From contig NC_043013.1 in the NCBI RefSeq assembly GCF_006345805.1, positions 45,136,001-45,200,000 of the forward strand: a DNA stretch of 64,000 bases, in the 5' to 3' direction. Positions within the stretch are counted from its first letter, which is position 1. The number at the start of each line of letters is the position of its first letter. The stretch comes from Octopus sinensis. Lineage: Eukaryota. A program made the position numbers and the translations under genes. Below are positions 22,824-55,747 of the stretch, in pieces. The notes below the pieces were generated by a model. It saw nothing but the letters and a program-made list of their open reading frames with translations, did no database searches and had not been told where the DNA came from.

Positions 22824-23202
22824 TGATATGGTGTAATTTGAGAGACATTTAGCTGTGATTTCTAGCAGGTTGAATGACCATGTAGAAATTGGTTTTTCTG
22901 AATGGATTTAGCAGAAATAGTTGAGCATGGACAAAATCATTGTCATTATCATAATTTAATGTTCATGTCTCATGATGGCATGGGTCAGGTAATTCGACTG
23001 GATCCAGTGGGCCTTGTGCTCCAGTGTCTGCTTCGACATGGTTTCTATGGATGGATGCCTTTCCTAATACCAACCACTTTGCAGTTTGTATTGGATACAC
23101 TAGTGAGGCCATCATGTGGTTTGCAAGACTGTGAACGCCAAGGGGGAAACTTTATGCTAGATGGTGAAGGGTACTTAGAGTATTCAAAAAAAAAAATTAG
23201 TG

Positions 23203-23730
23203 CAGGCGTTGCTTCCCAATCACATGGTTCCGGGTTCAATTGCACCGCATGGCACCTTGGGCAAGTACCTTCTGAAGCCTTGTGGATTTATTTGGTAGAT
23301 GGAAACTGAAAGAAGATGGTTGTGTGGACATATGTGTGTGTGTGTATATTTGCCCCCCCCCCCAATCACTGCTTGGCAACCAGTGTTGGTGTATTTATAT
23401 TCCTGCAACTTAGCAGTTCGCCAAAAGAAACCGATAGTATTAGTACCAGGTTAATGAAAATAAACAAAAAAATAAGTTGATTTGTCCGACTAAAATCCTT
23501 CAAAGCAGTGCTCCAGCATGACCACGATGATGATGATGTGTATATGTTTGTCCCTCTTGACAACCGATGCTGGTGTGTTTACGTCCCCGTAACTTAGCGG
23601 TTCGGCAAAAGAGACCGATAGAATAAGTACTAGGCTTACAAAGAATAAGTCCTGGGGTCGATGTTCTCGATTAAAGGTGGTGCTCCAGCATGGCCACAGT
23701 CAGATGACTGAAACAAATAAAAGAGAAAGA
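23203..23730 (+). mobile_element. SINE family 1, composite of two copies
   Basis: Same head and tail motifs; second tail 23545-23730. Confidence 0.8.
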
Positions 23731-24759: not shown

Positions 24760-24935
24760 AATCCAAACATGAAAACACAAGAGAAAACACAACAACACAA
24801 GGACGTGGAACAAGTATAGTATTATTGGACGCTCAGGAAGGAAGGGAAGAAGGAGGTTTTACGTTTCGAGCAGAGCTCTTCGTCGGAAACATAGGAAAAG
24901 GAAAGATCCAGAGAAGGGAAGACAGAGGAATATAT
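24760..24935 (-). mobile_element. Penelope-like terminal repeat (same type) with hammerhead motif
   Basis: Minus strand GTTT-CCGACGA-A-GAGC tct GCTC-GAAA-CGTA-AAAC at 24890-24856. Confidence 0.55.
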
Positions 24936-25496
24936 ATCTACACACACAAAATCACACGTGCAACATACATACACAATAGGTGTCTTTTGGTTTCCATTTA
25001 TGAAATCCAGTTTCAAGGTTTCCCATTGGTTTGGGACTTTACCAGAAGACACTTGTCGAATGTGCAAAACTTGCAGATACAAATGTGCGTGTGTGTGAGA
25101 GAGAGAGATATAATAAAATGTAATAATGAATGGGTTCTTCATTTTCTGTTATTCTTTCTAATATTTATTCACACACATACATATATTATATATGTATGGA
25201 CAAATGAAAGAAAAGGGTACTCAATACATTTAGTAGGAGTTACATGAATTATTTAGAAGTTTGATTTGTTTCCATGCAACTTAAAGCTTCATAGGCCTCT
25301 AACAGAAGCCCGTCTCTTTCAGGCTTTAGATTACTGAATCTAATTCAGTAATCTAAAGCCTGAAAGAAATGGGCTTCTGTTAAGGGCCTACAAAGCTTTC
25401 CCATTGGTTTGGGACTTTAACAGAAGACACTTGCCAAATGTGCAAAACTTGCAGATACAAATGAGCGTGTATATATATATATATTTTTTTTTTTTT

Positions 25497-28254: not shown

Positions 28255-28597
28255 TGGACCATCTTGGCTTCCGTGCCGCTGGCACGTAAAAGAGCACCAT
28301 TTGAGCATGATCGTTACCAACATCGCCTTACTGGCACCTGTGCTGGTGGCATGTGTAAAAAGATTCGAGCGAGGTCGTTGCCAGTACCGCCTGACTGGCC
28401 CCCGTGCCGGTGGCACGTAAAAAGCACCCACTACACTCTTGGAGTGGTTGGCATTATAGGAAGGGCATCCAGCTTTAGAAACTCTGCCAAATCAAGATTG
28501 GAGCCTGGTGCAGCCATCTGGTTCACCAGCCCTCGGTCAAAATCGTCCAACCCATGCTAGCATGGAAAGCGGACGTTAAACGATGATGAAGATGATG
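28255..28597 (-). mobile_element. SINE/short retroposon family 3 with (GAT)n end; further copies at ~4530-4885, 13390-13530, 26780-27305, 29460-30005, 32680-32870, 34555-34775, 36030-36190, 49312-49482
   Basis: GTGCCGGTGGCACGTAAAAGCACCCACTACAC...GGAAGGGCATCCAGCT.TAGAAAC...CCCATGCTAGCATGGAAAGCGGACGTTAAACGATGATG. Confidence 0.82.
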
Positions 28598-28738: not shown

Positions 28739-28820
28739 TTATGAATCATCTTCCCAGATATCACTACTTGCGGTGTCAAGACAAACTTCTATGTGTGTAC
28801 TTCTTGCCCTCAGGGTCATC
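28739..28820 (-). CDS. FAAP20: FAAP20-like terminal coding exon (second half of UBZ finger)
   Basis: ttttcttttttcCAG acceptor; phase 2; (Q)MTLRARSTHIEVCLDTASSDIWEDDS*; His and Cys sit at the human spacing C-x2-C-x15-H-x3-C; total CDS 831 nt = 276 aa. Confidence 0.87.
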
Positions 28821-30754
28821 CTGGAAAAAAGAAAATAATACCAAGATAAAACAAAAAGTAAAATGTAAATGAAACAAATACTGACAATACAAAACATTTT
28901 GGATTGCTTCTTATCTACTAATATAATTGACAGTATATCTCATCTATGTTTGTCCATCCTCCTGATGTATGTATCAAAGGCAATTAGCTGCTGTGATACT
29001 TTCAGTATTTCTAGAAACACTGACAGACAGATCATTTTGTTAGCTGGACACAGAATAGAAATCTATGTTACAATTTTAATAGTCCATATATAGCATACAT
29101 TTACATGGCTTAGAGGTTAGGATACTCAGCTCACAATTGTAAGTTCATGGGTTTGATTCCTGGTAGCATGTTGTGTCCTTGAGCAAGACACTTTATTCCA
29201 CATTACCCCAGACCACTCAGCTGGCAAATATGAGTTGTACCTGTAATTCAAAGGGGACCAGGCTTGTCACATTCTGCACCATGCTGAATCTCCTTGAGAA
29301 CTACATTAAGGGTATGTTGGTGTGTGGAGTGGTCAGCCACTTGTTCGTTAATTTCACAAGTAGGCTGTTCCATTGACTGGATCAGCTGGAAACCTTGTTG
29401 TCATAACCAACAGAGTCCAGTTTGTTAAATGATAAAGAGAGACATGAATTTTATTCAATTCATCATCATCATTATCATCATTTAACGTCCGCTTTCCATG
29501 CTAGCATGAGTTGGACGATTTGACTGAGGTCTGGCGAACCAGACTCCAATCTGATCTGGTTATTTTCGTTATTTTAAATGCACTTTACTGCAACTAATTA
29601 ATTATATAAACTGGCCATTGCTGCCTGACTGGCACCCATGCTGGTGGCATGTAATAAGCACCATTCAAGCATGGGTCAATGCCAGTGTCGCCTAACTGGC
29701 TCCCCGTGCCGGTGGCATATAAAAAGACTATGCGAAGGTGATCGATGCCAGTGCCCCCAACTGGCTCCCATGCTGGTGGCATGTAAAAATCACTGTCTGA
29801 ACGTGGCTGATGCCAGTGCCACCTGACTGGTTCTCATGCCAATAGCATGTGAAAAGAACCCACAACACTCTTGGCATTAGGAAGGGCATCCAGCTGTAGA
29901 AACCATGCCAGATCAGATTGGAGCCTGGTGCAGCCTCCTGGCTTGCCAGTCCTCGGTCAAACCGTCCAACCCATGCCAGCATGGAAAGCAGACGTTAAAC
30001 GATGATCCCCAGGATCCACTTGTGATACAATATTTAATACTTAATAGAAACAATATGCACAAAATACAAAATATAGGACATGAAATGTACTTTAGTCTCT
30101 TCTTTTTGGTCATGGTGCTTTCATGCATCCCCATGATTCTCTATAACCATCCAATTCCATTATTTTGAATTTGAATTAGAAGCTTAAGCCATAGCGAACC
30201 TTTCATTAGCTGATTACACAATAATGGATGCCACCCCTATGGATGAATTGCAGTTACTCTTTTGAGAGAGCTTGATGACCCTGACCTTTGATCTTCTAGG
30301 ATTCCTCTACTCAGCATCAATGTAAAAAGCAGAGTTGGCTCAATTGAGCGCTTCCCTTCAGAATTTGCCATGCTACACTCCTCTGGCTTTGCCATATCCC
30401 TCAGCCTTCATCAAAAACTATACAACCCATGACTATCCTGCATTATTTTAAAGTATAGTGTAATCCAGACTAGATTATCCATTGTCTTTCCTCTTTTTTT
30501 TTTAGAGATAGTAGGATTAGTTTAAAAATGATATGGTAGCTATTTCTAGCGTATCCAGCAATTTCAAAGAAACCACTTTGTTAGAAAGTTTCAAATTTAT
30601 AAGGAATTTGTGATTGATGCCTTTCTCAAAGCAGTGCAGTAAAATATCTGCCAACTGAGAAATAGAACTAGCAGTTCAACAGTATTTACCTAATTTAGTA
30701 ATCATGTAATAAGTACATTAACAGTAATATTCAGTATATAACAAGTTGCTATTT

Positions 30755-31150
30755 CTTTATTGCCCACAAGGGGCTACACACAGAGGAGACAAACAAGCAC
30801 AGACAAAGGAATTAAGTCGATTACAACGACTCTAGTGTGTAACTGGTACTTAATTTATCAACCCCGAAAGGATGAAAGGCAAAGTTGACATCGGCAGAAT
30901 TTGAACTCAGAATGTAGGGGCAGACGAAATACCTATTTCTTTACTACCCACAAGGGGCTAAACACAGAGGGGACAAACAAGGATAGACAAAGGGATTAAG
31001 TCGATTACATCGACCCCAGTGCGTAACTGGTACTTAATTTATCGACCCCGAAAGGATGAAAGGCAAAGTAGACCTCAGTGGAATTTGAACGGCAGATGAA
31101 ATACTGCTAAGCAGTTCGCCCAGTGTGCTAATGTTTCTACCAGCTCGCCG
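30755..31150 (-). mobile_element. SINE family 2, two stacked copies
   Basis: CCCACAAGGGGCTA.ACACAGAGG at ~30763 and ~30947. Confidence 0.82.
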
Positions 31151-31380
31151 TTGTACAAGTTGTATTGTTTTGTTATACATATACACAGTGTGCTTTTAAA
31201 GAAGATTGAACATATATCTCTCACAGATAACAGATAGCTTCTTGTTAATATTTGTTCATGTTGCTAAGATAGTCATGTCTTCTGTACAACCAGATGAACA
31301 CCCACAATCCTGTTTCCCTGCTAAATTAGACATGCCCGTTTAAATTAACATTGTGTATGCTGTAATAAATCCATACTTAC

Positions 31381-31630
31381 TGAGGTGAGAAAACTTCCTG
31401 ACAGATTGGACATTGTTTGATCAATGAAGATTCCCCCTGTTGGTTATTGTCTGATGAACTGCTGTTTTGAGCATTAGGCAAAGGAAATAAGGTCTTTGCC
31501 ACTGCTTTCCCATTAGTTTCTTTGTTGACGATTGGCTTTGGTTCCACTGGTGATTGACAAGTGAAGAGATCAGGACTAATCATACAATCTGGTTTCTTCA
31601 CATCAAGTAAACTGCGTTGGTGAGGTGTAC
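31381..31630 (-). CDS. FAAP20: FAAP20-like coding exon 4 (first half of UBZ finger)
   Basis: tttctaaaAG acceptor, GTAAGT donor; 250 nt, phase 1/2; ends LIKQCPICQEVFSP (recalled human LRSCPMCQKEFAP). Confidence 0.87.
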
Positions 31631-32239
31631 CTTTTAGAAACAAACATTAACATGAAATTTCGGGGCAATATAATTACAAGATACCAAACTTATAAGAAAG
31701 TGGGAATTGAAACTGTACATTGTACATGTACTTATGGGGTAACAATAAAATGATGTAGTTACAACCCCTTTTGCCAAATTCCTTTATTTTACTTAATTAA
31801 TAACATGTATATTCATATCATTAACCTTAAATTTAAACATACTTAAAAATAATAAAACTTTCTAGTTACAAAGGGGTACACACTCAGCTAAATGGAAATT
31901 TACTCTGTAGAGCTTGTCAAACCATGAAAGTATATTGCTTTCAAATTTTGGCACAAGGCCAGCAAGTTTGGGGGAAGGGATAAGTCATATACATTTGACC
32001 CCCAGGGCTCAATTGGTATTCATTTTATCAACCCCCAAAAGGATGAAACGCAAAGCTGACTTCAGCAGAAATTGAACTCAGAATGTAAAGATGGACAAAA
32101 TGTTGCTAAGCATTTTGCCTAGCATACTAATGATTCTGCCAGCTTGCTGCCTTAAATCATTAGAATTTATTAACATTTGCTTTCCTATTGGTTAAATCAG
32201 GCATGGGCTACCTTTTTCTAGCAGTAGACCTTATGATGT

Positions 32240-32611
32240 TTCCCTGGGCATGGATTCACTGAAGCTCCGGCGTCTGGCGACGGACTTGGTAAACACCCAC
32301 AAAGTTATCAACCACCTCACCAACAACAACACTGAACACCTTTTTGATCTCCATGTGTCTAACACACGTGGACATGCCTACAAAGTCAGAAAACAACACA
32401 GCTCCCATGACTTTCGGAAACATTTTTTCACGCTCAGAGTTGCTGAAGCATGGAATAAACTGCCTGCGTCAGTTGTTGACTGCCATGACTCTGCATCCTT
32501 TAAGGCCCTCATGCTTTCCGAAATCCGCCGAAACTACACCTGATTATACATACACTTTAGATGAGTTGTAGTGCACTTGAGCACTGTACACAATTATTAT
32601 TATTATTATTA
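32240..32611 (+). mobile_element. CR1/L2-group LINE 3' end with (ATT)n tail
   Basis: SLKLRRLATDL...TRGHAYKV...RKHFFTLRVAEAWNKLPASVV...FK, typical ORF2 C-terminus, followed by an ATT repeat. Confidence 0.85.
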
Positions 32612-33315
32612 TATATATATTTAATATAAATTAGGGAACATCAATTTACCATATGTAATACCATATGTAATACAGTTATGTTGGCATGAGTTGGATGGTT
32701 TAACTGGAGCTGCACCAGGTTCTATTCTGTTTCAGCATAGTTACTACAGCTGGATGCCCTTCCTAATGCCAACCACTTTGCACAGAATTCTGGGTGCTTT
32801 TCATGTGGCACCAGCACCAGTACTTTTTACATGGTACCATCATCAGTGCTCATGTGGCACCAGCACTAAGACTTGAAATTGTTAAAATTAATAGTCAGAC
32901 CTAAAAATCACGTTACAAAACCTTATTAGTATGCTACGGAAAAGATATTATATATACCATTCGCATAGACTTAAAAGGCTGAGAACCACAGGTTGCTACA
33001 TCTGTTTGTGATGGTTCTATAAATTCAGACAAATTTATCTACATGCAGTTGTGATGGACAGCAAACATATCTAGCTTAGAGTTGTCCACTGAGGGCTGCC
33101 GTCACCACATCAGGAAACAAAATGTTTAAAGCCACATATACAGAACAAATATTCTGGTGTATACACACAAATGGGAGGTTTATGATATACTTGCAATGCA
33201 TATAATACAAGTAAGAAATACTATTTGTTATGTTAAGCTCAGATATGAAACCATAAAGAAATGCATTTCATATTGTTTTCTTCTATTTCCTATAACTTTT
33301 ATTTACCATCGTTCA

Positions 33316-33647
33316 TCTCTCTTTATATAAACAGTAAAATATCTGCGTGTGTGTCCTTTATACAAATCCACATTTTTTCAGTTAGAGAGCTCGCACTTTC
33401 TATGGTCATTCAAAACCGTCCAAGGATGGTCGTGCACATCTTTACATTTCCCCAGTCACCCAGCAAAGCCATTAAAAAATCAATAGAAGTGACTTTTTTG
33501 TGAATTTTCTATCCAAAACCCAATCAAAATGCCCGAAGCTTGATACACCAATTGAATGCCAGCTAGCTGTATGTGATTGGTCGGAGATTTGGACAGTACT
33601 TGCGTGTATGTGCGCACGCAGCTGTATATGCCGGGTCATAGTGCTAG
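33316..33647 (+). mobile_element. Non-autonomous Helitron, family A (hairpin half deleted)
   Basis: A|TCTCTCTTTATATAAAC...CCGGGTCATAGTGCTAG|T; body matches the other two copies. Confidence 0.82.
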
Positions 33648-35223
33648 TATTTGATAAATTTATATACTCACCTGTACACTAGTGTGATACATCTCATAGG
33701 GGTTAGCACTGAGCAAGTTCTTCAGGTGTAAAAATATTATAGAATTGATGCAGAATCAAACTGCGCAAGATGTTTAAGATAAACGTCTCTTATGCTCTTT
33801 TATAACACTAAGTAGATGAGAGGAATAATTACCTCAGGTAACATTCTCAAAAAAGCTGATACCTTATTCCAACAATTACGTGAAGTGATTTATGCAAAAT
33901 CAAATACAAATATAAAATGAAACCTGTAGAGGACTTGAATGCAAGAATTTATGTTTGTTGTCCAACATCATATCTGTGGAGGCACATGGCCTAGTAGTTA
34001 GAGCAGTGGACTCGCGGTCGAGGGATTGCGGGTTCGAATCTCAGACCGGGCGATGTGTGTGTTTATGAGCGAAACACCTAAGTTCCACATGGCTCCGGCA
34101 GAAAGTAATGGCGAAACCTCTGCTGACTCTTTTGCCACAACTTTCTCTCACTCTTTCCTCCAGCATCTTGCAGCTCACCAGCAATGGACTGATGTCTGTC
34201 CAGGTGGGGAACCTATATGCCAAGAAACCGGGAAACCAGCCCTTATGAGCCAGGCATGGCTCGAGAAAGAACAGAAAAAAGAAACAAAAAAAAAACATCA
34301 TATCTACTAGTCTAGTTCCCTTGTAATAGAAGTCTGATATTCAAATGTAAAAGAACAATTCCTTACTTATATTTCATCTTTTTCACATTGAATACGTAAC
34401 ATTTTAAGCTGACTGTCAATACTTCAGGCTTGAATTCAGCTTGCCCTGTCACTCTGAATTCTTTCAAATACGATCAGGTCTGATTTTAGCTTAAATGTCA
34501 GGGTTTATTTTTATGCTTTTGTTATCAGATACATTCAGTACCCAGTTATAGGTCGGGAGGCCGTTACCAGTACCGCCTGACTGGCCCTCGTGCCGGTGGC
34601 ACGTAAAAGCACCCACTACACTCTTGGAGCGGTTGGCATTAGGAAGGGCATCCAGCTGTAGAAACTCTGCCAGATCATATTGGAGCCTGGTGCAGCCATC
34701 TGGTCTGCGAGACCTCAGTCAAATCATCCAACACATGCTAGCATGGAAAACGGACATTAAACAATGATGATGAATGAACGATGAAAGCATAAACACTTGC
34801 AGTTTTCCCTCTTCCCTACCAACACACACACACACACACACACAACCCCTATCCTAAACTGCTTTTAAAACGATTACTGCCAAAGTAGCTTAACCCTTTC
34901 ACATTCAAATTACTCTGAAAAATGTAATACTTATTTATTCACATTGCTTTGAATTAATCAATCAATAGCTTTGAGATTTCAATGATGTGAATGTTTTTAA
35001 AGTGACATTGTAGTGTAAGTGTAAGAGGCCAGATCTGGCCAATTTGAACACAAAACAGGCTGAATAGTTTTGCTGGACATGACCACTTTGAATGCTAAAG
35101 GATTACTCTACCGTTGGCTTTGAGTCACTTTGTTATCGGTATTTACAACAGAAAAAATTTTTGTCTAGGCAACAGAAACTGTCTATTTCATCTACATCGT
35201 AATTATTAGTAGCACATCTTTAC

Positions 35224-35470
35224 CTGGATTGAAATTTGATAGTTTTTCAATGCAATTTGATTGGTTGTTATTTAAATGTTCTTGGTGAAAATGATTGATA
35301 AGTTGTGAAAAAGTACAAGCATCATTTGTTTCAGAAGAACCGGCATTTAGTTGATCTGTGATTCCACAATGAACATCTGTAGCACAGTTGGAACAGAATT
35401 CTGGAAACGGTGTCCATTTCGATTCATAATTATTCAACGCTTCATTATGACTGCATTCAACATTATTAAC
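35224..35470 (-). CDS. FAAP20: FAAP20-like coding exon 3
   Basis: T-rich tract plus AAG acceptor, CAG|GTAAAG donor; 247 nt, phase 0/1; contains SKWTPFP (recalled human FSWTPFP). Confidence 0.82.
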
Positions 35471-38089
35471 CTTCAGAATTAAAAAAAAAAAAGAGAAAAG
35501 AAATAAGTTGTCATATGGGAACAAAAACAAAGCAATCCCATTTTGGAGGCTGTAAATATTTTAATTAGCGTTGATGCATTAGCATATGAAAATGGTGAGG
35601 CTCTTTTATCTTTTAACTGTTTTAGTTACTGGAGTGCGACCATGTTGGGACACTGCCTTAAAAGGTTTAATCGAATAAATTGACATCAGAACTTATTTTT
35701 TCTATCAGTTTCTTTTGCCAAACTAATAAATTATAGGAATATAAACAAACCAACACCAGTTGTGGTGGGGAGATAAACACAAACACATACACACATCTCT
35801 ACAATGGACTTCCACAGTTTTCTGTCTACCAAATTCACTCATGAGACGTTGGTTAGCTTCAGTAAAAGACACTTGCCCATGGTGCTACACAGTGTCACTG
35901 AATTCCAAAACCCCATGGTTGCAAAGTGATCTTCCTAGCCACATATCCATGCTTGTACCTATAAATGATGTGCCTAACCCACCACAACAGAATTGAGATC
36001 TTAAAACCAAGGTACCACATAGAAAGCACTGGGATGGGTGCTGGGGCTGCCTAAAAAGCACCCAGTACCCTCTGTAGAAGCCAAGCCAAAACAGACTATG
36101 GAACCTGGTGCAGATCCTGGTCTTGCCAGTTCCTGTCAAGCTGTCCAACCCATGCCAGCATAGAAAACGGACGTTAATGAGGATGATGATTGAAAGTTAA
36201 GTTGAGATTTGATAGAAACTTGAATGCTCATAAGAGACAAAATTTGGCATCAAGTGAAAGAAGTTGTACCTAATTAATATACATTCGTTACTTGAGGTGA
36301 AATGCATCAAAGGATAACACTGTATTTTCTCTAGAGATGAACTAGGTTCAATAGTAAAATTTTTATTATTATAGTAAAGTTCATTTAGGTTGCATGGGGC
36401 TAATTAGAAGATAAGATAATGAGTGAAGTCATAGAGATACTGTTGTTGTTATTGTTATTCATTTAACATGATCAAGCCTGCTTGAGTAAACACACAGTAA
36501 TTGAAAACTTAAACAAAATTTTAATATTTTTACCTTTTGCTCAGTTTACCTGGATTTACCTGTAATTAGAGTCACTTTGAGACAAAAATTATGCAATAGA
36601 ATTGATTAAGAACCCTTTCTTCAATTATGTTCCAAATATCACATTAATATGTGGACAAGTAAAAAAGTTACAGTTGTTTAATGAAACTAGTCTAAATTCA
36701 TGATTATTTTAGAATTTAATTGAAACTCATGAGGGGTGTATTTTGGTCAGAAATATAGTAACGAAAGGGTTAAGGATGGTCTGCAGATCGAGTAACAAAT
36801 ATATAAAACTACAATGTTACTAGCATGAGAATATGACTTGCAGCACTGGGTTAACCATTAAGCAAAATAAACACATGCTTAAGGCATCAAAGGAAGTGGG
36901 GTGCCACAAAAATGGTAAATGGTTTAAACTTGCTTAAATAATATTTGAAGTGGTTTGCGGGAAGGACTGTTTCAACGAAGTTGCGTATTGTCCTTGCATT
37001 CGAAACACGGTGTAGATGAAACAGGGACAACTGATGAAGGGGAATGTTCTTTATGTTGATTGCCTTGTTTCCCTGTTTGTTTGTTTTTTTCATTGTTCGA
37101 AAAAAGTTCGTTTTTTATGTTTTCGTTTCTCATTGTGTTCAACGTTTTTTTGGTGTCCTGTACCCATATATGCATGTATATATACAGGTATGTACATATA
37201 TGTATGTATATATGCATATATTTATATATTATTTATATTATTATATGTGTGTGTGGGGGGCGTGCGTGTCTTTGTGTCTGTCCCCAACCACCGCTTGACA
37301 ACTGGTGTTGGTGTGTTTACATCCCGTAACTTAGCAGTTTGGCATTAGAGACCAACAGAATATGTAGCAGGCTTAAAAAAAAATTGAGTATAGGGATCGA
37401 TACATTTGACCAGTAATTCTTCAAGGCGGTGCTCCAGCATGGCTGCAGTCTAGTGCCTGTAATAAGTAAAAGACCAAGCACCAGAGCTGATTCTCCTTTC
37501 TCTCTCAGAAGTAATGTTGCATCATGAGAAACATCAAGGGGAACTACTCCCAATTTTCATTTCTAGTTGAGTAAGGGATTAGTCACAGCTTATAGGAAAA
37601 CGCCTATGTTACTGAAAAACATTACTGCAAAGAACAGACCAATGTGTTTTATAGCATGAAACGGTAATAAAACATAACAGAACTACATTTTCTGTGTAGT
37701 TAAGCATTGTAACGATAAAAACAGATTTCTGAGTTTCTTATCCATTAGAGATGTACTTGCATAGCAAGTGATTTGATCTGAGATCGTGTGCTGGAACGAA
37801 AACAATTGCAGCGTGGAAGGTGCTTATAAGCCATTTAAGAAACACACAAAAGCCGTTCGATTCACTTCAACATTTAAGTTTAATTTGTCAAAATATTTTC
37901 GTCGCTATAAGACCGCGACCTGTTCACTGACAAAAATATTTCTTAAATGGCTTACAAACACCTTCCACGCTGCAATTGTTATCCATTAGAATATGTAAAC
38001 ATTGCAAATGAGAAGATTCGGCTACTTTAACCACTGATTCAAGAAAGTATGAAAAATAAAATGTTCTAGTCGTAAATATTATTTAGGTA

Positions 38090-38440
38090 AGAAAATGGCG
38101 TTGAGACCCCCTTTGGTCATGACTGACCGTGGGATTGCACCTAGAAAGTTACCCTTCCAGGCACAAGTCCAGGCAAGGTTATTTATGGAAGACAAGCAGT
38201 CGCCCATGCATACCGACCTCCCCTCTCCACGCCACCAGTGTTATCCAAGGGAAAGGCAAAGGGGCCGATACAGCTTGGCACCTGTGACGTCGCAACTCAT
38301 TCTTACAGCTGAGTGAACTGGAGCAACGTGAAATAAATTGTCTTGCTCAAGAACACAACACGCAGCCCAGTCTGGGATTCGAACTCACAACCTCACGATT
38401 GTAAGCTCGACACTCTAACCACTGAGCCATGCACCTTCAC
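38090..38440 (-). mobile_element. tRNA-headed SINE family 4; related copies at ~780-1110(-), 29100-29420(+), 44345-44640(+); related heads at 33975-34270(+), 61710-61900(-)
   Basis: GGCTCAGTGGTTAGAGTG...GTGAGTTCGAATCCC...GTGTTCTTGAGCAAGAC...TTTATTTCACGTTGCTCCAGT.CACTCAGCTG. Confidence 0.75.
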
Positions 38441-39602
38441 AATGGTGTATGGCAAAGAAATATATATATTTCACACTGGCATACATCCACACTATAGTGA
38501 AAGGTTATAGTCAACTGCAGTCACATTAGTATATGATTCTTGGAACAGAGTTCCCTCAAATGAGTTCTTTGAAACCTCTCAGTTACAAGAAAAAATTTAT
38601 GGGGTTCTATGAGATAAGGTGCCAACCCTTTAGCATTCAGATTACTTTGTCAAATGTAATATTCATGTATCCATATTGTTTTGAATTACTCATGCATTGT
38701 CTTGTAGGTTTGAGATTTCAATGACGTTGATTGTGTAATTTTAGAATAACATTGTAGGGTAGGCATGAAATGCCAAATCTGGCCAATCTGAACATAAAAC
38801 AAATTTAGGCTGGATATGGCCAGTTTAAATGCTAAAATAAAGTCAAAAATGTTTGTCCTTTACTCTGACCACAGAAAAGTCTACAACAGAGTTTCATCAT
38901 CGATTAAATGCTTGTATGGGTAAGACAGAATTTGTTGAGGTAGCTTTTCTATGGCTGAATGCCCTTCCTGTTGCTAGTCTTCCAATGCTTCCAAGCAAAG
39001 TCACGTTTCCCTATAACCAGATGTGTTTTTCACAGAAAACTGGAAATCTCTTGTGTGATGGTGACACTAGTTTGCAACCATCATGTGATGTCAAGACAAG
39101 GGTACACAAAAACACACACACATACATATATACATAAGGACTGAACCCCAAATTACATGGTTGCAAAGCAAGCTTCTTAACCACACAGCCACATCTGTGT
39201 CTTATTTCAAATTTTGGCACAAGGCCAGTAATTTTAGGAATGACAGTCCACTGCAGGACGAAGGCCTCAGCATGTTCTCTCCACAATAGAATGACTTGAG
39301 ATGTAACTGGTTTTATGAGCCCATTCTGCCACATTAGCTCAACATGGCTTGGCAGAGGGATGCAGTTTTTTATACTCTTACCCAGGAGTAGTTAAGTTGA
39401 TTACATCGATCCCAGTGCACAACTGGTACTTATTTTATCAACCCACAAAAAGATGACAGGCAAAGTTGGCCTCAGCAGAATTTGAACTCAGAACATAAAG
39501 ACAGATAAAATGTTAAGAATTTTGCCTGGCATGCTAACAATTCTGCTAGCTTGCCATCCTTGTAACACTTTTGAAAATATTAAAAAGAAAGATCTCTGTG
39601 AC

Positions 39603-39717
39603 CTTGAAAACTGGGAATTTAGAGAACTGAGGTGGCTGCACATTAGCATGAAGATCTTGTAGCTGCTGCCGTAACTTCTTGAAAATATCATTTTGTCTGC
39701 CATTAGATGTAAAAGAA
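39603..39717 (-). CDS. FAAP20: FAAP20-like coding exon 2
   Basis: tttgtttttCAG acceptor, AAG|GTCACA donor; 115 nt, phase 2/0; SSFTSNGRQNDIFKKLRQQLQDLHANVQPPQFSKFPVFK aligns loosely to the FANCA-binding segment (LWAELLRTV...PSLPAFP). Confidence 0.75.
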
Positions 39718-39899
39718 CTGAAAAACAAAAAATAATATTTTATTAATCACGTTGAACTTAAGAAAACTCTCGTATATTTTTGTTGTCCTACTTAAAGATA
39801 GTATTTGAAAAGTTTATATTAGTTCATATTAGCTGGTCACTTTGTTTGAGAACTTTAGCTTTTCAAGATTGTCACTTAAAGATTTACTAACGTAATCAA

Positions 39900-41230
39900 G
39901 TGCACCAATAATTATTGGTATAAATGCAAAAATACCTTTCAACTGCTTCAAACAAACAAAGTTACAAGCTTGGCTATTTCTTTTCAAATACCCTCAGACT
40001 ATTCATTCTAGAGTTAACCTCAATCTTCAATCTTTTGGCAGGGATCCATCCGGATCTTTGGAAACAGTATGTCTCGTTCTTAAGAAAAATAACCTTTCTG
40101 ACCCCAACCATCTCTCAAACATGAAATGAACAGTGATTAACAGTCATATTACCAACACCTTGAATCCATTTTACTCTCTAACAGCTACCAATAAGGCTCC
40201 TACTCTGCTATGTCACTCACCGGTGGGTCTTTGCTTCCAAGAAATTTTTTGAAAGTATGTTGTTGCATTTGACATCAATAAAGTATTGACCCTTATCTGG
40301 AACACATGTATCCTAGCTCTAAATTGCCTACCTATGAGCTTTGTATCTCTCTCTCTCTCATCTCTTAGATTAGTAGCTTCTAGAAAAAATTCACAATCGC
40401 ACTAAGACCTTACAGAGTTCTCTTTGTGCTACTCTATCAACTCTTCTATGTCCAAGGTTCACTTTGTCCCCTAAACCTTTCCTTGAATACATGATTGACT
40501 TAGTTGAATTCACAGCCAACAACAGCCACTCCTATAAAGATGATACTCACTGTCACTCGTATTTAACATGCAATATAGACACCTTATACACACACTGATC
40601 TCATGAACAGAAACTTCAAAACCATTCTCCTATAATACATGTCAATGTTATTTCATTCAACAAAACAAAAATTTAATCATTACACATGTCAAGAAAACAA
40701 TAGTGTCCTTTTCCCCCCTAAACATTAACCCTATGCAGCTAGAACAGTCATACCCTCTGCAAATGCTAGACCTCATCACTAATGGTCTCCCCTGTTGATG
40801 TTAGATCCTCAACATATACTGAACTTCATCTTCAGGGTCAGTTCCTAACAATTACAAACCCTCCAGTGAAACCCATGTAATACTTCTCCCTTGTCTGAAA
40901 CAATACTACTGCTATTACGATTACAAATGAGTTCACTGTGAGGAAAGTTTACCATGAAAATATATCCATAGTATCTCGCCATTAATAGTGAAAAACTGCA
41001 GTGAATTGATGATGGTGAACTTACAAGACACGGCTGTTACACATACAGACATCCTAGACTGCATCTAGAAAAGGCCTCTGACTAATCATCATGAATTTAC
41101 TCGTTACCACATTCAAACCTCCAGCTCACAGATGTCTTCTCACTGTATTTCTATTGCAATGTGGTCCCTGCTCTTTAGGGTTGGCTGATCATGTGCCACC
41201 CCCAATCACGTCCAACCGACAGAGCCTCTA
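39900..41230 (+). mobile_element. Highly decayed LINE-like remnant in a FAAP20-like intron
   Basis: C-rich composition unlike the flanks and faint RT-like motif traces; no intact ORF. Confidence 0.3.
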
Positions 41231-41918
41231 CATTAGTGTTTCCCAACCATTTTTTGCCTATGGACCCCTTTGTTTCCAATTTTACTCTACTGGACCTCCG
41301 TAGCCATTCGATGTATATAAAAATAAAATACTGCTGTCTTTTTGTAATTAAATATTAGGAATTGTAAAGAAAAAGAATTAAAATATTTTGAGTATTGTAG
41401 AAGTATAAGCAATTTCATTTCTATATTTAAGAGATGGGGAATTATGAACATTATTTACATTCGACTGATATACCCTCCAGCCTTCATCAAGTGTCTTGGG
41501 GAAACAGAGATAGACACTCATTGTGACCAAAGAAAACATAAAAGACACTTGTGTGTGAACGTGTGTAACGTCATTATACTTTTCCAAGTGTTAGCTAAAC
41601 TTTCATCTTAACTAAAACACCAAAAAGTTTTTAAGTTATCAAACTTCATCCAAGTTTCCGCAAGAGTAAAATTACATAACCATATTTCGAATTTATTAGC
41701 CATACGTTACAATTTCCCTGAGGGAAATTCCGTAACCTGAGACAACCGTAAAGCGGGGGAAATCATTACTTTTTATAGAGCATAACTTAGATATTCCAGA
41801 GTTATTCCCCTTTATATGAGACGGTGAGGGTGAAATCTACTTTCGCCATGAATTAGTTTAAGAAAACAAAATCTTCAGCAGGGTTCTAAATATTTAAGAG
41901 GGTTATGAGATTAACAAC

Positions 41919-41949
<31 letters not shown>

Positions 41950-42822
41950 TTACAAAGGAAAATTGAAAGGGTGCAACGTTTAAAACTTTCCTGGGTATTT
42001 CTCGGTATAAGAACCGACTTCAACGTAGGAAGCTTGCCTTTTACTCAACACTGTCGGGAGTCCCTTCGTGGTCGCTCCACCTGCTAGATGTAGCAGCTAA
42101 ATGCCCCTTAGTTCACACCCTACCATTAAAAAAAACGGCGTAACTTCGGTATATGTACCGGATACATTTCAAGAAAGTGTTTTTTTATATATATATATGG
42201 GGGGGGGGAGGGTTACGGTTAAGGGTGGGAGAAAAGGGTTTCTGTTATCTTCAGAAATGTAAACAAAGCCACTTCCGGCACTTACGGTACTTATACCGAA
42301 GGATCGCAAAAAAAAAAAAAAAAAGAACATATTCAGCAACGTAGACCAGGGGAAAAAATGGACTGGTCATGACTGGAACGTCTTTGATCGATCATACGTA
42401 TGCTCAATGAGAGCTGGCCTGACGTTAAAAAATGAACAAATATTTTCAAAATTTTATTCCTTTGTTCTTCGACTTTCTTAATTTTCGTAATAACGATTTC
42501 AAATTTTGGCAAAAAGGACAGCAGTTACGAGGTGGGCGGGGATGGGTTGTCTATTACATCGACCCCAGAACTTGGCTGGAACTTATTTTATCGAACCTGA
42601 AAAAAAAAAAAAAAATAAAAAGCAAAGTCGACCTCGGCGGCATTTGAACTTAAAACGTAAAGCAGGAAGAAATACGGGTAAGCATGTTGTCTGGTGCACG
42701 AACCATTCCAGTGGCTGTCATCAACAAATGTTTTAAAGAATTTGTTTTGTTTAAAAGAAGACGAACTTAAAAGGCATTAACTTCATAAATAACTTTATGA
42801 GAGTTGAAGGAAATCATTATAC

Positions 42823-42959
42823 CTGTTGCCATCATTCTTACACGAAGTATCATTAAAGCTTTTATCCTTCGTAGACGAACTGCTGTCGAGTTTTGAGTCG
42901 TTACAGTCCGAGGTCGAAGATCGTTTTGAAAGTTTCAACTTTTGCCGCTTTGACGCCAT
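42823..42959 (-). CDS. FAAP20: FAAP20-like, first coding exon (ATG at 42959)
   Basis: GACATGGCG start, CAG|GTATAA donor; 137 nt, phase 2; MASKRQKLKLSKRSSTSDCNDSKLDSSSSTKDKSFNDTSCKNDGN; N-terminus resembles recalled human MEAARRPRLGLSRR; phase fits the next exon. Confidence 0.75.
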
Positions 42960-43011
42960 GTCAGACACTCAAGGGAGACAACTGCTAGAAAAAAACCCAT
43001 TAAATAGTGAA

Positions 43012-43608
43012 TGGATCTCCGTCGAGTGTTTGTCAAAAGGAGGAATCGCAGGTGTTACCCAATTAAAGTATACCTACATAAGTGTGCCTTCCCCATGGCA
43101 TTCGGAAAAATGGATAGTCTTTAATGAAAACTTTCTACAATTACGTTTCAGATGGTGTACATTACGATCATGTCAGAATTTAATATGAAAAAAAAAAAGA
43201 TAAAATTTTGGTGGGAGATGATGAAGGAGGAGTTTTGGATATTTCACACGAACCAATGTTATTTCTTTAAAACTTTCAGAAAAATTGGCATTGGATCTCC
43301 GTGGAGTGTTTGTCAAAAGGAGGAATCGCAGGTGTTACCCAATTAAAGTATACCTACATAAGTGTGTCTTCCCCATGGCATTCGGAAAAATGGATAGTCT
43401 TTAATGAAAACTTTTTACAATTACGTTTCAGATGGTGTAGATTACGAATGCCCCAGCATGGCCGCAGCCTTCGGGCTAAAACATTTTTAAGGATTTAAGG
43501 ATGAAAAAAAAAAAAGAGGAAAATTTCGGTGGGAGATGATGAAGGAGAAGTTTCGGATATTTCACATGAACCAATGTTATTTCTTAAAAACTTTGAGAAA
43601 AATTGGCA
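43012..43608. repeat. Tandem duplication, 280-bp unit (43012-43291; 43292-43608, second copy interrupted by a ~50-bp SINE-tail piece)
   Basis: TGGATCTCCGT.GAGTGTTTGTCAAAAGGAGG starts at 43012 and 43292; both copies end AAAAATTGGCA. Confidence 0.9.
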
Positions 43609-45377: not shown

Positions 45378-45448
<71 letters not shown>

Positions 45449-45528
45449 TGTGTGTGTTGACGTGAGAAGAGTATATGACAGAATAATTAATCCTATATTA
45501 TTGACACTCATAGAAAACCTGATGGCAT

Positions 45529-45960
45529 TAAAAGCTTTAATGATACTTCATGTAAGAATGATGGCAACAGGTATAATGATTTCCTTCAACTCTCATAAAG
45601 TTATTTATGAAGTTAATGCCTTTTACGTTCGTTTTCCTTTTAATAAAACAAATTCTTTAAAACATTTGTTGATGACAGCCACTGGAATGGTTCGTGCGCC
45701 AGACAACATGCTTGGCGGTATTTCTTCCTGCTTTACGTTTTAAGTTCAAATGCCGCCAAGGTCGAGTTTGCTTTTTATTTATTTTTTTTTTTTTCAGGGT
45801 CGATAAAATAAGTTCCAGCCAAGTTCTGGGGTCGATGTAATAGACAACCCATCCCCGCCCACCTCGTAACTGCTGTCCTTTTGCCAAAATTTGAAATCGT
45901 TATTACGAAAATTAAGAAGGTCGAAGAACAAAGGAATAAAATTTTGAAAATGTTTGTTCA
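45529..45960 (+). repeat. Inverted duplicate of 42433-42864 (3' part of FAAP20-like first coding exon, donor site and start of intron, including a SINE)
   Basis: Reverse-complement match over ~430 bp with scattered substitutions; donor CAG|GTATAA retained at 45571. Confidence 0.92.
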
Positions 45961-46186
45961 GTTTATGCACTAAAATCAGGACCGGCAGATAATCAAAAGC
46001 ACCATTGATCATTGACTTCAGAGTCAGTGTTAAATTGACATTTACAAGACAATAATGGAGAAAGGCAGGTGGAGAAACAAAGATCACTTTCCTAAAAATT
46101 GGTCTGGTATCTGATCAGTTACATTTTAAACGATGAAAAGATAGAGATGGCGATAAGGGCGTATATATATATATATATATATTATC

Positions 46187-46516: not shown

Positions 46517-47427
46517 GTAGCAGTATCGCCCGGCGTTGCTCGGGTTTGTTTCGACCCGCTGGAATTGGAATTTTTGAAAAGTAAAAATTTTGCTTGTCTA
46601 TGTGTGTGTGTGAGGAGTAAATCGTTATGTATTTATTTTGTTCTGTTTCCTGTCTGTCTTTAAAAAAAATTTTTTTTTTTGAGGAGTGGTTTAAGCATTA
46701 ATAAGAGAAAGTAGCAGAATGTATGATGTTGAATAAGAGTGGTAGAAAGAGGATATGATAGTGGTATACACTTGCAAAGAGAAAATAGCAGAAAGTGTGG
46801 TAGGTTTAAGGTACACTTGCAAAGAGAAAGTAGGAGAAAGTGTGGTAATAGAAGGAGTAAAGCATTTGAAATGAGAGAGGCAAATCGTAAAATATTGAGT
46901 TTTCTCGAATTTTTGCTTAATTGGGGGTGAAATTGAAAGAAATTTATATGCCATGACCTAATGGAATCTACTTCGAAAAATCATAGGTAAATTCCAATTG
47001 AAGAAATTGTGTGAGGAGTAAATCGTTATGTATTTCTTTGTTTCTGTTTCCTCTGTTTATTTTTTTTTAGGAGTGATTTGCAAAGAGAAAGTAGATGTAT
47101 ATGTTTGCGTGTGTATGTGTGTGAGGAGTAAATCCTTATGTATTTATTTTTTTCTCTGTTTCCTACTTGCAAAGAGAAAGTAGGAGAGAGTGTGGTAATA
47201 GAAGGAGTAAAGCATTTGAAATGAGAGAGGCAAATCGTAAAACATTGAGTTTTCTCAAATTTTTGCTTAATTGGGGGTGAAATTGAAAAAAATTTATATG
47301 CCATGACCCAATCGAATCTACTTCGAAAAATCATAGGTAAATTCCAATTGAAGAAATTCTATATTGTACAATTGTATTAAAAACAAACATAGTAACAGGA
47401 AGAGAAAATCTGCCTTTTATCATAAGA
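46517..47427 (-). mobile_element. Non-autonomous Helitron, family B-like 3' end, with internal ~200-bp duplication
   Basis: Minus-strand 3' end AAACCCGAGCAACGCCGGGCGATACTGCTAC|T; 5' TCTTATGATAAAAGG; ~46810-47020 repeated at ~47165-47360. Confidence 0.7.
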
Positions 47428-48715
<1,288 letters not shown>

Positions 48716-51774: not shown

Positions 51775-51978
51775 GCTGATTCGTTAGCTACTGCACGCAT
51801 TTTTTTTCTCTCCTTCTTTCTGTGTTTTTTTTCTCTCTGTGTATCTTTCTGTTGAAGAGCGTAGGCTCGAAACGTTAAAGACTTGTTTTATTTATATTTC
51901 CTGAGCGCCATACTAATACAATTGTTCGTTTGTTTTCCACTTGCCTTCGTCTTTTGTCTATTTTCATAAAGCTTCCCG

Positions 51979-51980
<2 letters not shown>
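51775..51980 (+). mobile_element. Penelope-like element terminal repeat carrying a minimal hammerhead motif
   Basis: TCTTT-CTGTTGA-A-GAGC gtag GCTC-GAAA-CGTT-AAAGA at 51844-51881, followed by a (TA)n tract. Confidence 0.6.
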
Positions 51981-52062
<82 letters not shown>

Positions 52063-52085
52063 ATACACATACATATACACACACA

Positions 52086-52170
<85 letters not shown>

Positions 52171-52474
52171 TAACATATATATAGGATTGGCCAAAGGTCA
52201 CCCGACAGTAAATCAAAATTCCATAAATATTTAATATTCAATTTAATTTATTCATTCCAGTTATGAATGTTTAATAATTGAATACTGTGAGTTAAAATCA
52301 CCATTTTTCCCAACATTTGTCTATTTATTAGCGAAGTCTTATATAAAATAATTTTTTGTATATATATACACCTTCATCTCTGCTTCTTCCTTCTTTGTTA
52401 TCTAATTAATTAAAGACATACCAGCGAAAACCACGAGCTTCCCAATGTTATTACATCCATTTTCTTCTCATATA

Positions 52475-54014: not shown

Positions 54015-54331
54015 GGGAACTAAAATACAAGCTCCATTTACCTTGACTTCTAAGCTTTCGAGAGAATGCTGTAGAAATTATCCAATATGAGAGTCCGTTG
54101 CAGGATGCTACTGCAGCTTACAATTACATGTTTTCTGAATAATAGAAAACCCATTATTTGATCGATGGCATTTACTTAAGGCCAGCAAAAGGCATTGGAA
54201 GTAGGCTTAACACAAGGGGAGAACTTTTGATCTATGCATTTAGTTGCATGTTCATATTGAATAGATCAAATTGGAGTTCTCCTTCTTTCTGGAGCTTCGA
54301 ATCACCTACAAAGATTTTTTAAAATATCTTA

Positions 54332-55337: not shown

Positions 55338-55368
<31 letters not shown>

Positions 55369-55702: not shown

Positions 55703-55747
<45 letters not shown>

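What the first reader, a model, noticed from the sequence alone, without database searches (positions are those of the whole stretch)
28739..42959. Complete FAAP20-like gene in an apparent cephalopod, invisible in the ORF track
Five minus-strand exons join with consistent phases (2,0,1,2) into a 276-aa protein. It shows the FAAP20 motifs in order: basic N-terminus (KRQKLKLSKR), a helix-plus-proline segment resembling the FANCA-binding region, WTPFP, and a CCHC UBZ with the human cysteine/histidine spacing followed by an acidic D-I-W tail. The splice structure is seen in the sequence; the human motifs are recalled. FAAP20 is, to my knowledge, characterised only in vertebrates, so a mollusc ortholog would imply that the FANCA-FAAP20 arm of the Fanconi core complex predates the protostome-deuterostome split.
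Basis: partly seen in the sequence, partly recalled or inferred. Interest (0 to 1): 0.75.

Follow-up and report, generated by a model that had tools for sequence, protein, structure and literature searches.

The report
Divergent FAAP20 gene in octopus
The five exons are a real, already annotated but unnamed Octopus sinensis gene, and it is very probably a fast-evolving counterpart of FAAP20, a small human DNA-repair protein described so far only in vertebrates. In octopus, its ubiquitin-binding zinc finger has lost two residues that the human protein needs.

Summary
Five minus-strand exons (42959-42823, 39717-39603, 35470-35224, 31630-31381, 28820-28739) have AG/GT borders and intron phases 2,0,1,2. 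They give a 276-aa protein identical to XP_029646751.1, 'uncharacterized protein LOC115220748 [Octopus sinensis]'.

The FAAP20 reading is supported.
- The octopus protein alone is sub-threshold: Pfam UBZ_FAAP20 scores 17.9 bits against a cut-off of 25.
- Full-length cephalopod relatives, at least one from a cuttlefish, score 45-50 bits.
- The cephalopod profile matches mammalian FAAP20 with hhalign probability 97.6% (E 5e-12) and the human FAAP20 zinc finger in the PDB at E 8e-10. The next hit, TAX1BP1, is 16 bits lower.
- Outside the zinc finger, three collinear blocks match: the N-terminal basic motif, a helix followed by FP, and WTPFP.
- All three mammalian introns have octopus counterparts of the same phase. 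One lies at the identical codon, 10 codons after the first zinc cysteine.

Caveats:
- No Pfam FANCA_interact hit, and FANCA in octopus was not checked.
- Octopus replaces the ubiquitin-binding Asp and Ala (human D164, A168) with Ser and Glu.
- The zinc-finger region gives dN/dS of about 1.2 between two octopus species, on few substitutions.

Verdict: a new, divergent member of a known family, of modest interest.

The parts
42823..42959 (-). Coding exon 1 (aa 1-45 plus 2 nt). Starts at the ATG at 42959, has a GT donor, and is followed by a phase-2 intron. Contains the basic N-terminal motif KRQKLKLSKR at 42921-42950.
   Evidence: The motif aligns to mammalian M-E-A-x-R-R-P-R-L-x-L-S-R-R-R (hhalign P 0.0065). 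Mammals also have a phase-2 intron right after this motif, in codon 21.
39603..39717 (-). Coding exon 2 (aa 46-84), followed by a phase-0 intron. Contains the predicted helix QNDIFKKLRQQLQDLHA (39645-39695) and FPVFK (39603-39617).
   Evidence: AlphaFold2 predicts a helix at aa 54-70 with block-mean pLDDT 63-72. It aligns to the mammalian LR...LPAFPG block, which holds the FANCA-binding W40/L44/R45 region; that block alone is not significant (P 0.54). The mammalian phase-0 intron falls after ..FPGQ| or ..LPGK|, within one codon of the octopus position.
35224..35470 (-). Coding exon 3 (aa 85-166 plus 1 nt), followed by a phase-1 intron. Contains WTPFP (35402-35416) and then C-x2-C-A-T.
   Evidence: W, P, F, P are invariant in the five cephalopod sequences (the second position is T, or E in Argonauta). 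W87, P89 and P91 are invariant and T88 and F90 nearly so in 22 mammals. hhalign P 0.004.
31381..31630 (-). Coding exon 4 (aa 167-249 plus 2 nt), followed by a phase-2 intron. Contains the cephalopod-conserved SPDLF (31563-31577) and LFP (31482-31490), and the first half of the UBZ finger, KQCPICQEVFSP (31383-31418).
   Evidence: The intron splits codon Q250, 10 codons after the first zinc cysteine. Aotus (R157) and Mastomys (K163) have an intron at the same aligned codon and phase, and so does a cuttlefish-like genomic contig, CA|GTATGT.
28739..28820 (-). Coding exon 5 (aa 250-276 plus stop). Second half of the UBZ finger and tail: MTLRARSTHIEVCLDTASSDIW (28754-28819), then EDDS and the stop.
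   Evidence: Aligns to human LTQLDVDSHLAQCLAESTEDVTW. pLDDT is about 88. The top Foldseek hit is 3wwq, the FAAP20 UBZ.

Best explanation
This is the Octopus sinensis ortholog of FAAP20 (Fanconi anemia core complex-associated protein 20). It is a small, mostly disordered nuclear protein that has diverged so far that single-sequence searches and NCBI naming miss it.

Shown here: the gene structure; the C-terminal CCHC zinc finger of the FAAP20 (UBZ2) type; collinear conservation of the N-terminal basic motif, a helix followed by FP, and WTPFP; and intron positions shared with mammals.

Inferred from human FAAP20 biology: the N-terminal helix region docks on FANCA, stabilises the FANCA-FANCG-FAAP20 module of the Fanconi core complex, and so supports FANCD2/FANCI monoubiquitination during crosslink repair.

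Inferred from residue mapping: in the genus Octopus the finger still binds zinc but probably no longer binds ubiquitin in the canonical way. Human D164 and A168 of the D-A-L motif are S257 and E261 (N and E in O. bimaculoides), and the Trp is no longer C-terminal. The decapodiform relatives keep D-A-L and the terminal Trp. In octopus the protein may therefore act mainly as a FANCA partner.
For: The exact 276-aa product is annotated in three Octopus species. A HMMER scan of 1.84 billion representative proteins finds full-length relatives in Argonauta (E 3e-28) and in two transcript-derived proteins (E 5e-12 and 9e-12). Those two score 44.7 and 50.2 bits on Pfam UBZ_FAAP20, above the cut-off of 25. 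One of them sits on a contig whose neighbouring metaxin is at least 90% identical to that of the cuttlefish Acanthosepion pharaonis. hhalign of the cephalopod profile against 22 mammalian FAAP20 sequences gives probability 97.6%, E 4.7e-12. The cephalopod profile against PDB sequences gives the FAAP20 UBZ at 42.1 bits (E 8e-10), with TAX1BP1 next at 26.2 bits. Foldseek's top hits are the FAAP20 UBZ structures 3wwq and 2muq. With the UBZ removed, three collinear blocks sum to a score of 61, against 10.5 +/- 2.1 (maximum 22.4) for 200 column shuffles. Mammalian intron phases 2,0,2 map onto octopus 2,0,(1),2, and the last intron lies at the identical aligned codon. dN/dS is 0.41 overall and 0.22 in the N-terminal third. 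The roles of the zinc ligands and the D-A-L/Trp residues come from PMC4267625 and PMC4370504.
Against: The octopus protein alone scores 17.9 bits on UBZ_FAAP20, below the cut-off, and ties with Zn-C2H2_12 at 18.1 bits. No cephalopod sequence hits Pfam FANCA_interact. The W40/L44/R45 FANCA-binding triad (PMC6400411) is not clearly conserved, and its block is not significant on its own (P 0.54). The basic N-terminus could match through composition alone. No intermediate invertebrate sequences link cephalopods to vertebrates. FANCA or FANCG in octopus, expression, and any interaction were not tested. The UBZ region has dN/dS 1.24, though this rests on only 12 substitutions.
Confidence: 0.83

Rival explanations
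1. A cephalopod-specific disordered protein that shares only a UBZ2-type zinc finger with FAAP20. This would be domain-level homology or domain capture, not an ortholog and not a Fanconi core component.
For: Statistically solid similarity is confined to the last ~40 residues. There is no FANCA_interact hit. The cephalopod-conserved motifs C-x2-C-A-T, SPDLF and LFP have no mammalian counterpart. The protein is about 95 aa longer than mammalian FAAP20.
Against: WTPFP, the N-terminal motif and the helix-FP block occur in the same order, and they are the most conserved positions in both groups. All three mammalian introns have same-phase counterparts, two of them outside the UBZ-coding part. The overall layout is the same: a small protein with a single finger at the extreme C-terminus.
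Confidence: 0.11
2. A decaying or non-functional gene in Octopus: a former FAAP20 that is losing its function, with the annotated model being only a surviving ORF.
For: The ubiquitin-contact residues are lost. The UBZ region has dN/dS 1.24. Exons are only slightly better conserved than introns between two octopus species (89-97% against about 82-94%). No transcript contig carrying the octopus protein was on record.
Against: The ORF and all splice sites are intact in O. sinensis, O. vulgaris and O. bimaculoides, and a homolog exists in Argonauta. dN/dS is 0.41 overall and 0.22 in the N-terminal third. The zinc ligands, WTPFP, SPDLF and LFP are invariant.
Confidence: 0.04
3. A member of another UBZ-bearing family, such as the TAX1BP1/CALCOCO autophagy receptors, RAD18/WRNIP1, SLX4 or Spartan.
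For: Zn-C2H2_12 scores 18.1 bits on the octopus protein. TAX1BP1 UBZ chains are the second-best PDB hits.
Against: The Zn-C2H2_12 match covers only 14 residues and is below its cut-off of 23.2. The family profile prefers FAAP20 by 16 bits. WRNIP1 scores E 1.2 with the family profile and SLX4 E 1.4 with the single octopus sequence. There is no SKICH, coiled-coil, RING, SAP or SprT domain.
Confidence: 0.02

Closest known systems
Vertebrate FAAP20 (human C1orf86, Q6NZ36; Pfam PF15751 FANCA_interact + PF15750 UBZ_FAAP20)
   Same: Both are small, largely disordered proteins. Both carry an N-terminal basic M-x-A-x-[KR]-R-x-[KR]-L-x-L-S-[KR]-R motif, a helix followed by an FP motif, WTPFP, and a single C-terminal C-x2-C-x15-H-x3-C finger followed by an acidic D-[IV]-x-W tail. 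The three mammalian introns have same-phase counterparts, and the one inside the finger lies at the identical codon.
   Different: The octopus protein is 276 aa against about 180 aa, with an extra phase-1 intron and extra conserved motifs (C-x2-C-A-T, SPDLF, LFP). There is no Pfam FANCA_interact hit. W40/L44/R45 are not clearly conserved. In Octopus the D-A-L ubiquitin motif reads S-E-L, the Trp is one residue closer to the last Cys, and it is followed by EDDS.
Decapodiform cephalopod homologs (P0005, 273 aa; P0010, 270 aa, cuttlefish-like), unnamed transcript-derived proteins
   Same: Collinear over their full length with the octopus protein (E about 1e-11 in a library of 1.8 billion proteins). 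They share the same conserved blocks and the same phase-2 intron in the finger.
   Different: Only 28-31% identical to the octopus protein. They keep the D-A-L motif and a C-terminal Trp and pass Pfam UBZ_FAAP20 (45-50 bits), so they look like canonical ubiquitin binders, which octopus does not.
TAX1BP1 UBZ fingers; Pol eta UBZ
   Same: TAX1BP1 has a beta-beta-alpha zinc finger with the C-P-x-C start. Pol eta shares the D-A-L helix logic with FAAP20 (PMC4370504; PMC4267625).
   Different: These have different protein architectures. TAX1BP1 scores lower (26 bits against 42 bits); Pol eta did not appear among the hits and was not compared directly. They lack WTPFP, the N-terminal motif and a C-terminal Trp tail.

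Membership tests
FAAP20 | C-terminal UBZ2-type zinc finger with ligands C-x2-C-x15-H-x3-C | tested here: met
   C240, C243, H259 and C263 have spacing identical to human C147, C150, H166 and C170. The fold is predicted with pLDDT about 88, and the top Foldseek hit is 3wwq.
FAAP20 | Pfam PF15750 UBZ_FAAP20 above the gathering score (25 bits), for the octopus sequence itself | tested here: not met
   17.9 bits, E 0.0027 for O. sinensis; 15.4 bits for O. bimaculoides.
FAAP20 | UBZ_FAAP20 homology at family or profile level | tested here: met
   The full-length relatives P0005 and P0006 score 44.7 and 50.2 bits. hhalign against mammalian FAAP20 gives probability 97.6%, E 4.7e-12. The profile against PDB gives FAAP20 at 42.1 bits, E 8e-10.
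FAAP20 | Ubiquitin-binding D(-4)-A(0)-L(+3) helix motif plus a C-terminal Trp (human D164, A168, L171, W180) | tested here: not met
   Octopus has S257, E261, L264 and W272 followed by EDDS; O. bimaculoides has N-E-L. P0005 and P0010 keep D-A-L and a terminal W. That these residues are essential comes from PMC4267625 and PMC4370504.
FAAP20 | N-terminal FANCA-interaction region (Pfam PF15751; W40/L44/R45 helix) | tested here: inconclusive
   No PF15751 hit in any cephalopod sequence. A helix is predicted at the equivalent place, and collinear blocks match. The register of the W/L/R triad is ambiguous, and that block alone has P 0.54.
FAAP20 | Invariant WTPFP motif between the FANCA-binding region and the UBZ | tested here: met
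   WTPFP is at aa 103-107. W, P, F, P are invariant in cephalopods (second position T, or E in Argonauta) and the motif is invariant or nearly so in 22 mammals.
FAAP20 | Gene structure: intron positions and phases | tested here: met
   Aotus and Mastomys have phases 2,0,2: in codon 21, after ..PGQ|/..PGK|, and in the codon 10 residues after the first Cys. Octopus has phases 2,0,1,2, with the first, second and fourth introns at equivalent places. A cuttlefish-like contig shows the same last intron.
FAAP20 | Physical association with FANCA in the Fanconi core complex | not testable with these tools
   Needs the octopus FANCA sequence and co-folding or biochemistry.
FAAP20 | FANCA and FANCG present in the same genome | not tested
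A literature search for FANCA plus Octopus found nothing relevant.
TAX1BP1/CALCOCO-type UBZ (Pfam Zn-C2H2_12) | Match above the gathering score (23.2 bits) and the SKICH/coiled-coil architecture | tested here: not met
   18.1 bits over 14 residues only, with no other domains. The family profile scores TAX1BP1 16 bits below FAAP20.

The most novel reading that the evidence does not exclude
FAAP20 is an old bilaterian gene that has gone unrecognised in protostomes because it evolves very fast. Cephalopods keep it, and within Octopus the zinc finger has lost the residues needed to read ubiquitin. If so, the protein there would work only as a FANCA partner or would have acquired a new ligand: a natural separation-of-function variant.
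Probability: 0.35. Interest if true: 0.45.

Novelty: new member of a known kind. Interest (0 to 1): 0.36.

Why it matters
FAAP20 has been studied only in vertebrates, and the papers I could search describe no invertebrate FAAP20. A cephalopod ortholog would place the origin of this subunit before the protostome-deuterostome split. It would also give a name to a set of 'uncharacterized' cephalopod genes.

The comparison shows which parts of a very fast-evolving protein are kept over more than 500 million years: the N-terminal basic motif, WTPFP, the zinc ligands, and the intron positions. That points experimenters to WTPFP; none of the papers read here assigns it a function.

The contrast between octopus (D-A-L lost) and cuttlefish-like relatives (D-A-L kept) offers a natural test of how much FAAP20 function depends on ubiquitin binding. 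It does not change the general picture of the Fanconi pathway, because FANCA itself is already reported far outside animals (PMC11061109).

Tried and rejected
- **Word-indexed homolog searches.** Searching with the octopus protein and with the cephalopod alignment returned only cephalopod proteins. A ~35-residue finger cannot reach significance in a database of 5.8 billion proteins.
- **Human FAAP20 as query.** All 120 hits listed (of 141) were mammalian, so no non-mammalian vertebrate or other invertebrate bridge sequences were obtained.
- **Pfam FANCA_interact.** No hit in any cephalopod sequence.
- **hhalign -glob on the N-terminal halves.** This gave a meaningless end-to-start alignment. 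I used local hits plus a column-shuffle control instead.
- **Identifying the source organisms from SRA run numbers in the literature.** No papers were found. The neighbouring metaxin's protein cluster was used instead.
- **Synteny test.** The metaxin that lies head-to-head with the cuttlefish-like gene has no match in the octopus window (tblastn E > 5). The window neighbour is an SH3BP5-like exon, not SKI as in vertebrates, so synteny gives no support.
- **Literature.** Searches for invertebrate FAAP20 or octopus FANCA found nothing relevant. The Ciona FA-gene paper and the FAAP20 discovery paper are not held.
- **Pfam on intronic and flanking ORFs.** Regions 32250-32543, 39011-39334, 29728-29982, 42826-43188 and 24825-25247 gave no hits.
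- **Other UBZ families.** Considered and rejected; see the rival explanations.
Full report
**Observation**

The exons are 42959-42823, 39717-39603, 35470-35224, 31630-31381 and 28820-28739. The intron phases are 2,0,1,2, the CDS is 831 nt, and the product is 276 aa. A stop codon lies four codons upstream of the ATG in frame.

The product is 100% identical over its full length to XP_029646751.1, 'uncharacterized protein LOC115220748 [Octopus sinensis]'. Its 90% cluster also holds a 276-aa O. vulgaris protein and a 274-aa O. bimaculoides protein, all unnamed. So the window is Octopus sinensis. The gene is real and already modelled, but it has no functional name and no precomputed Pfam domain.

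**Is it a constrained gene?**

The O. bimaculoides locus (L007) has the same five exons with conserved splice sites. Exon 2 carries a 6-nt deletion. Exon identity is 89-97%, against roughly 82-94% for the collinear intron blocks.

Nei-Gojobori dN/dS, O. sinensis against O. bimaculoides:

| Region | dN/dS |
|---|---|
| Whole CDS | 0.41 |
| First 110 codons | 0.22 |
| Middle | 0.43 |
| Last ~40 codons (UBZ) | 1.24 (10 non-synonymous, 2 synonymous changes; small numbers) |

This pattern fits a fast-evolving but functional coding gene whose zinc-finger region is unusually free to change in this genus.

**Relatives**

A word-indexed search found only the octopus cluster. An exhaustive HMMER scan of 1.84 billion representative proteins found:
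- a partial Argonauta hians protein (E 3e-28, 42% identity);
- two proteins from transcript-like Logan contigs, P0005 (273 aa, E 4.8e-12, aligned 1-271) and P0006 (E 8.9e-12);
- two repeat-protein hits, which I disregard.

The full-length form of P0006 is P0010, 270 aa. The contig that carries P0006 also carries a metaxin gene, and that metaxin's 90% cluster contains MTX of the cuttlefish Acanthosepion (Sepia) pharaonis. P0006/P0010 therefore come from a cuttlefish or a close relative. That P0005 comes from another decapodiform is my inference.

The five-sequence alignment (A1) shows these invariant blocks: M-A-x-K-R-x-x-L-K-L-x-K-R, an L in a helix, F-P, W-x-P-F-P-x-x-C-x-x-C-A-T, S-P-D-L-F, L-F-P, and the finger.

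**Tests of the FAAP20 reading**

- **Single sequence.** Pfam UBZ_FAAP20 scores 17.9 bits (cut-off 25), tied with Zn-C2H2_12 at 18.1 bits over only 14 residues. FANCA_interact does not hit. The best PDB sequence hit is the human FAAP20 UBZ (3wwq, E 0.0016), followed by TAX1BP1 (E 0.26).
- **Relatives.** P0005 and P0006 score 44.7 and 50.2 bits on UBZ_FAAP20, well above the cut-off.
- **Family profile against PDB.** A1 gives the FAAP20 UBZ at 42.1 bits (E 8.2e-10), TAX1BP1 at 26.2 bits, and WRNIP1 at E 1.2.
- **Profile against profile.** hhalign of A1 against an alignment of 22 mammalian FAAP20 proteins (A2) gives probability 97.6%, E 4.7e-12 over the finger and tail.
- **Structure.** AlphaFold2 predicts a mostly disordered protein with a helix at aa 54-70 and a confident finger at about aa 238-269. 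Foldseek's four best PDB hits are FAAP20 UBZ structures (probability 0.85-0.97, TM 0.64-0.76 relative to the target), although E-values are poor for so short a domain.

**Beyond the finger**

With the finger removed from both alignments, hhalign finds three local matches in the same order in both families:

| Block | Octopus / cephalopod | Mammal | P |
|---|---|---|---|
| N-terminal motif | MAsKRqkLKLsKR | MeaxRRpRLrLSRR | 0.0065 |
| Helix-FP | LRqqLq...FsxFPv | LRtxsxdL...LPAFPG | 0.54 |
| WTPFP | WTPFP | WTPFP | 0.004 |

Their summed score is 61. Two hundred column-shuffled versions of the cephalopod alignment gave 10.5 +/- 2.1, with a maximum of 22.4. This null destroys local composition, so the basic N-terminal match may be flattered by it. 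WTPFP is not low-complexity, and it is the most conserved stretch outside the finger in both groups.

**Gene structure**

This is an independent test. I recovered the genomic loci of two mammalian FAAP20 genes (Aotus L008, Mastomys L009) and solved their exon chains exactly. Each has four coding exons and intron phases 2,0,2.

| Mammalian intron | Position | Octopus counterpart |
|---|---|---|
| 1, phase 2 | Codon 21, right after the basic motif | Phase 2, codon 46, between the basic motif and the helix |
| 2, phase 0 | After ..AFPGQ\| (Aotus) or ..ALPGK\| (Mastomys) | Phase 0, after ..FPVFK\|, one codon further from the FP anchor |
| 3, phase 2 | The codon 10 residues after the first zinc cysteine (R157 = AG\|G; K163 = AA\|G) | Phase 2, Q250 = CA\|G, also exactly 10 residues after C240 |

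Octopus has one extra phase-1 intron, in codon 167. A genomic-type contig from the cuttlefish-like organism (L010) shows both the same phase-2 intron (CA|GTATGT after ..FPTQ) and a phase-1 acceptor near the octopus-specific intron. As a rough estimate of my own, the chance that one of four introns falls on a given codon and phase is about 0.5%. With the second match within one codon, coincidence is unlikely. This argues for orthology of the whole gene rather than a shared domain.

**Function**

In human FAAP20 the N-terminal region binds FANCA, and the W40A/L44Q/R45A mutant abolishes this binding (PMC6400411).

The finger binds ubiquitin through a D164-A168-L171 helix motif plus the C-terminal W180. 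In ITC, D164A and A168Y abolished binding and L171A significantly weakened it. W180A abolished ubiquitin binding and impaired crosslink repair in vivo (PMC4267625). Other mutations of ubiquitin-contact residues abolished accumulation of FAAP20 at DNA damage sites (PMC4370504).

Mapping human residues onto octopus:

| Human | Octopus |
|---|---|
| C147, C150, H166, C170 | C240, C243, H259, C263 (kept) |
| L161 | R254 |
| D164 | S257 |
| L167 | I260 |
| A168 | E261 |
| L171 | L264 |
| A172 | D265 |
| D177 | D270 |
| W180 | W272, one residue closer to the last Cys and followed by EDDS |

O. bimaculoides has N and E at the D and A positions. P0005 and P0010 keep D-A-L and end in W.

The most likely mechanism therefore has two parts. 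The N-terminal helix region partners with FANCA in an A-G-20-type module; this is inferred and untested. The finger reads ubiquitin in decapodiforms but has probably lost or changed that ability in Octopus; this is inferred from residue identity and the raised dN/dS. The helix is present where expected, but the W/L/R triad cannot be placed with confidence (two registers are possible), so membership on that feature is inconclusive.

**Comparison with what is known, and novelty**

Human and mouse FAAP20 are only about 53% identical (PMC3631253), so failure of simple searches across phyla is expected. The searchable literature describes no invertebrate FAAP20. FANCA has been reported even in early-diverging fungi (PMC11061109), and FANCC/E/F in plants, Nematostella and Ciona (PMC10085685). 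An ancient origin of core-complex subunits is thus the prevailing view, and a protostome FAAP20 fits it rather than overturning it.

I could not check whether orthology databases or InterPro already group other invertebrate proteins with FAAP20, nor whether octopus has FANCA. The result is best classed as a new, strongly diverged member of a known family.

**Synteny**

Synteny gives no help. The only recognisable neighbour in the window is an SH3BP5-like terminal exon. Vertebrate FAAP20 lies next to SKI (PMC11575085). The cuttlefish-like gene abuts a metaxin gene that is absent from the window.

Noticed in passing
window 10010-11482 (+): A 490-aa open exon whose start matches the C-terminal end of the Pfam SH3BP5 domain (E 6.7e-11, profile positions 184-228 of 231). 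It is probably the large last coding exon of an SH3BP5-like gene, about 17 kb downstream of the FAAP20-like stop codon and on the opposite strand.
   Followed up: partly
window 50524-50934 (+): A 136-aa ORF matching Pfam Helitron_like_N (E 2.1e-30, profile positions 95-191 of 191). This is a fragment of a Helitron transposon.
   Followed up: partly
window 42429-42864 and 45529-45964: An inverted duplication, 93-97% complementary in three adjoining pieces. One arm covers the last 42 nt of FAAP20-like exon 1, its donor site and about 390 nt of intron 1. The copy lies 2.7 kb upstream in the opposite orientation. The ORF at 45390-45743 (+) translates to the same out-of-frame peptide as the exon 1/intron 1 border.
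   Followed up: partly
window 43002-43608: Tandemly repeated units (166-nt and 103-nt copies, 90-95% identical, spaced 280-318 nt apart) directly upstream of the start codon, in the presumed promoter and 5' region.
   Followed up: no
L002 2214-3690 (also L003-L006): In the cuttlefish-like contigs, a complete metaxin coding sequence on the opposite strand runs head-to-head into the FAAP20-like coding sequence. The metaxin ATG overlaps the codons for ..DEDC.. of FAAP20-like exon 1. The same join is seen in 14 contigs from several samples. This suggests overlapping divergent first exons, but an assembly join through shared sequence is also possible.
   Followed up: partly
window 28431-28550, 29728-29982, 32691-32876, 34624-34767, 36038-36163, 22902-23309: The same peptide-like strings (..AAPGSNL.., ..YSWMPFLMPTT..) recur in ORF translations on both strands, inside the introns and elsewhere. 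This looks like a dispersed short repeat (SINE-like) family. Pfam finds nothing in the one copy scanned (29728-29982).
   Followed up: no
window 54000-56000 (also 47331-47876, 51875-52216, 62603-63010): Long dinucleotide microsatellite tracts give artefactual ORFs made of CVCV, HTHT, SLSL or IYIY repeats. GC skew reaches -0.33 at 54-56 kb.
   Followed up: no
window 35384-35401 (aa 108-113 and following); 31563-31577; 31482-31490: The cephalopod-invariant motifs C-x2-C-A-T (just after WTPFP), SPDLF and LFP have no counterpart in mammalian FAAP20. Their role is unknown; a second metal site or a partner-binding or degron motif are possibilities.
   Followed up: no
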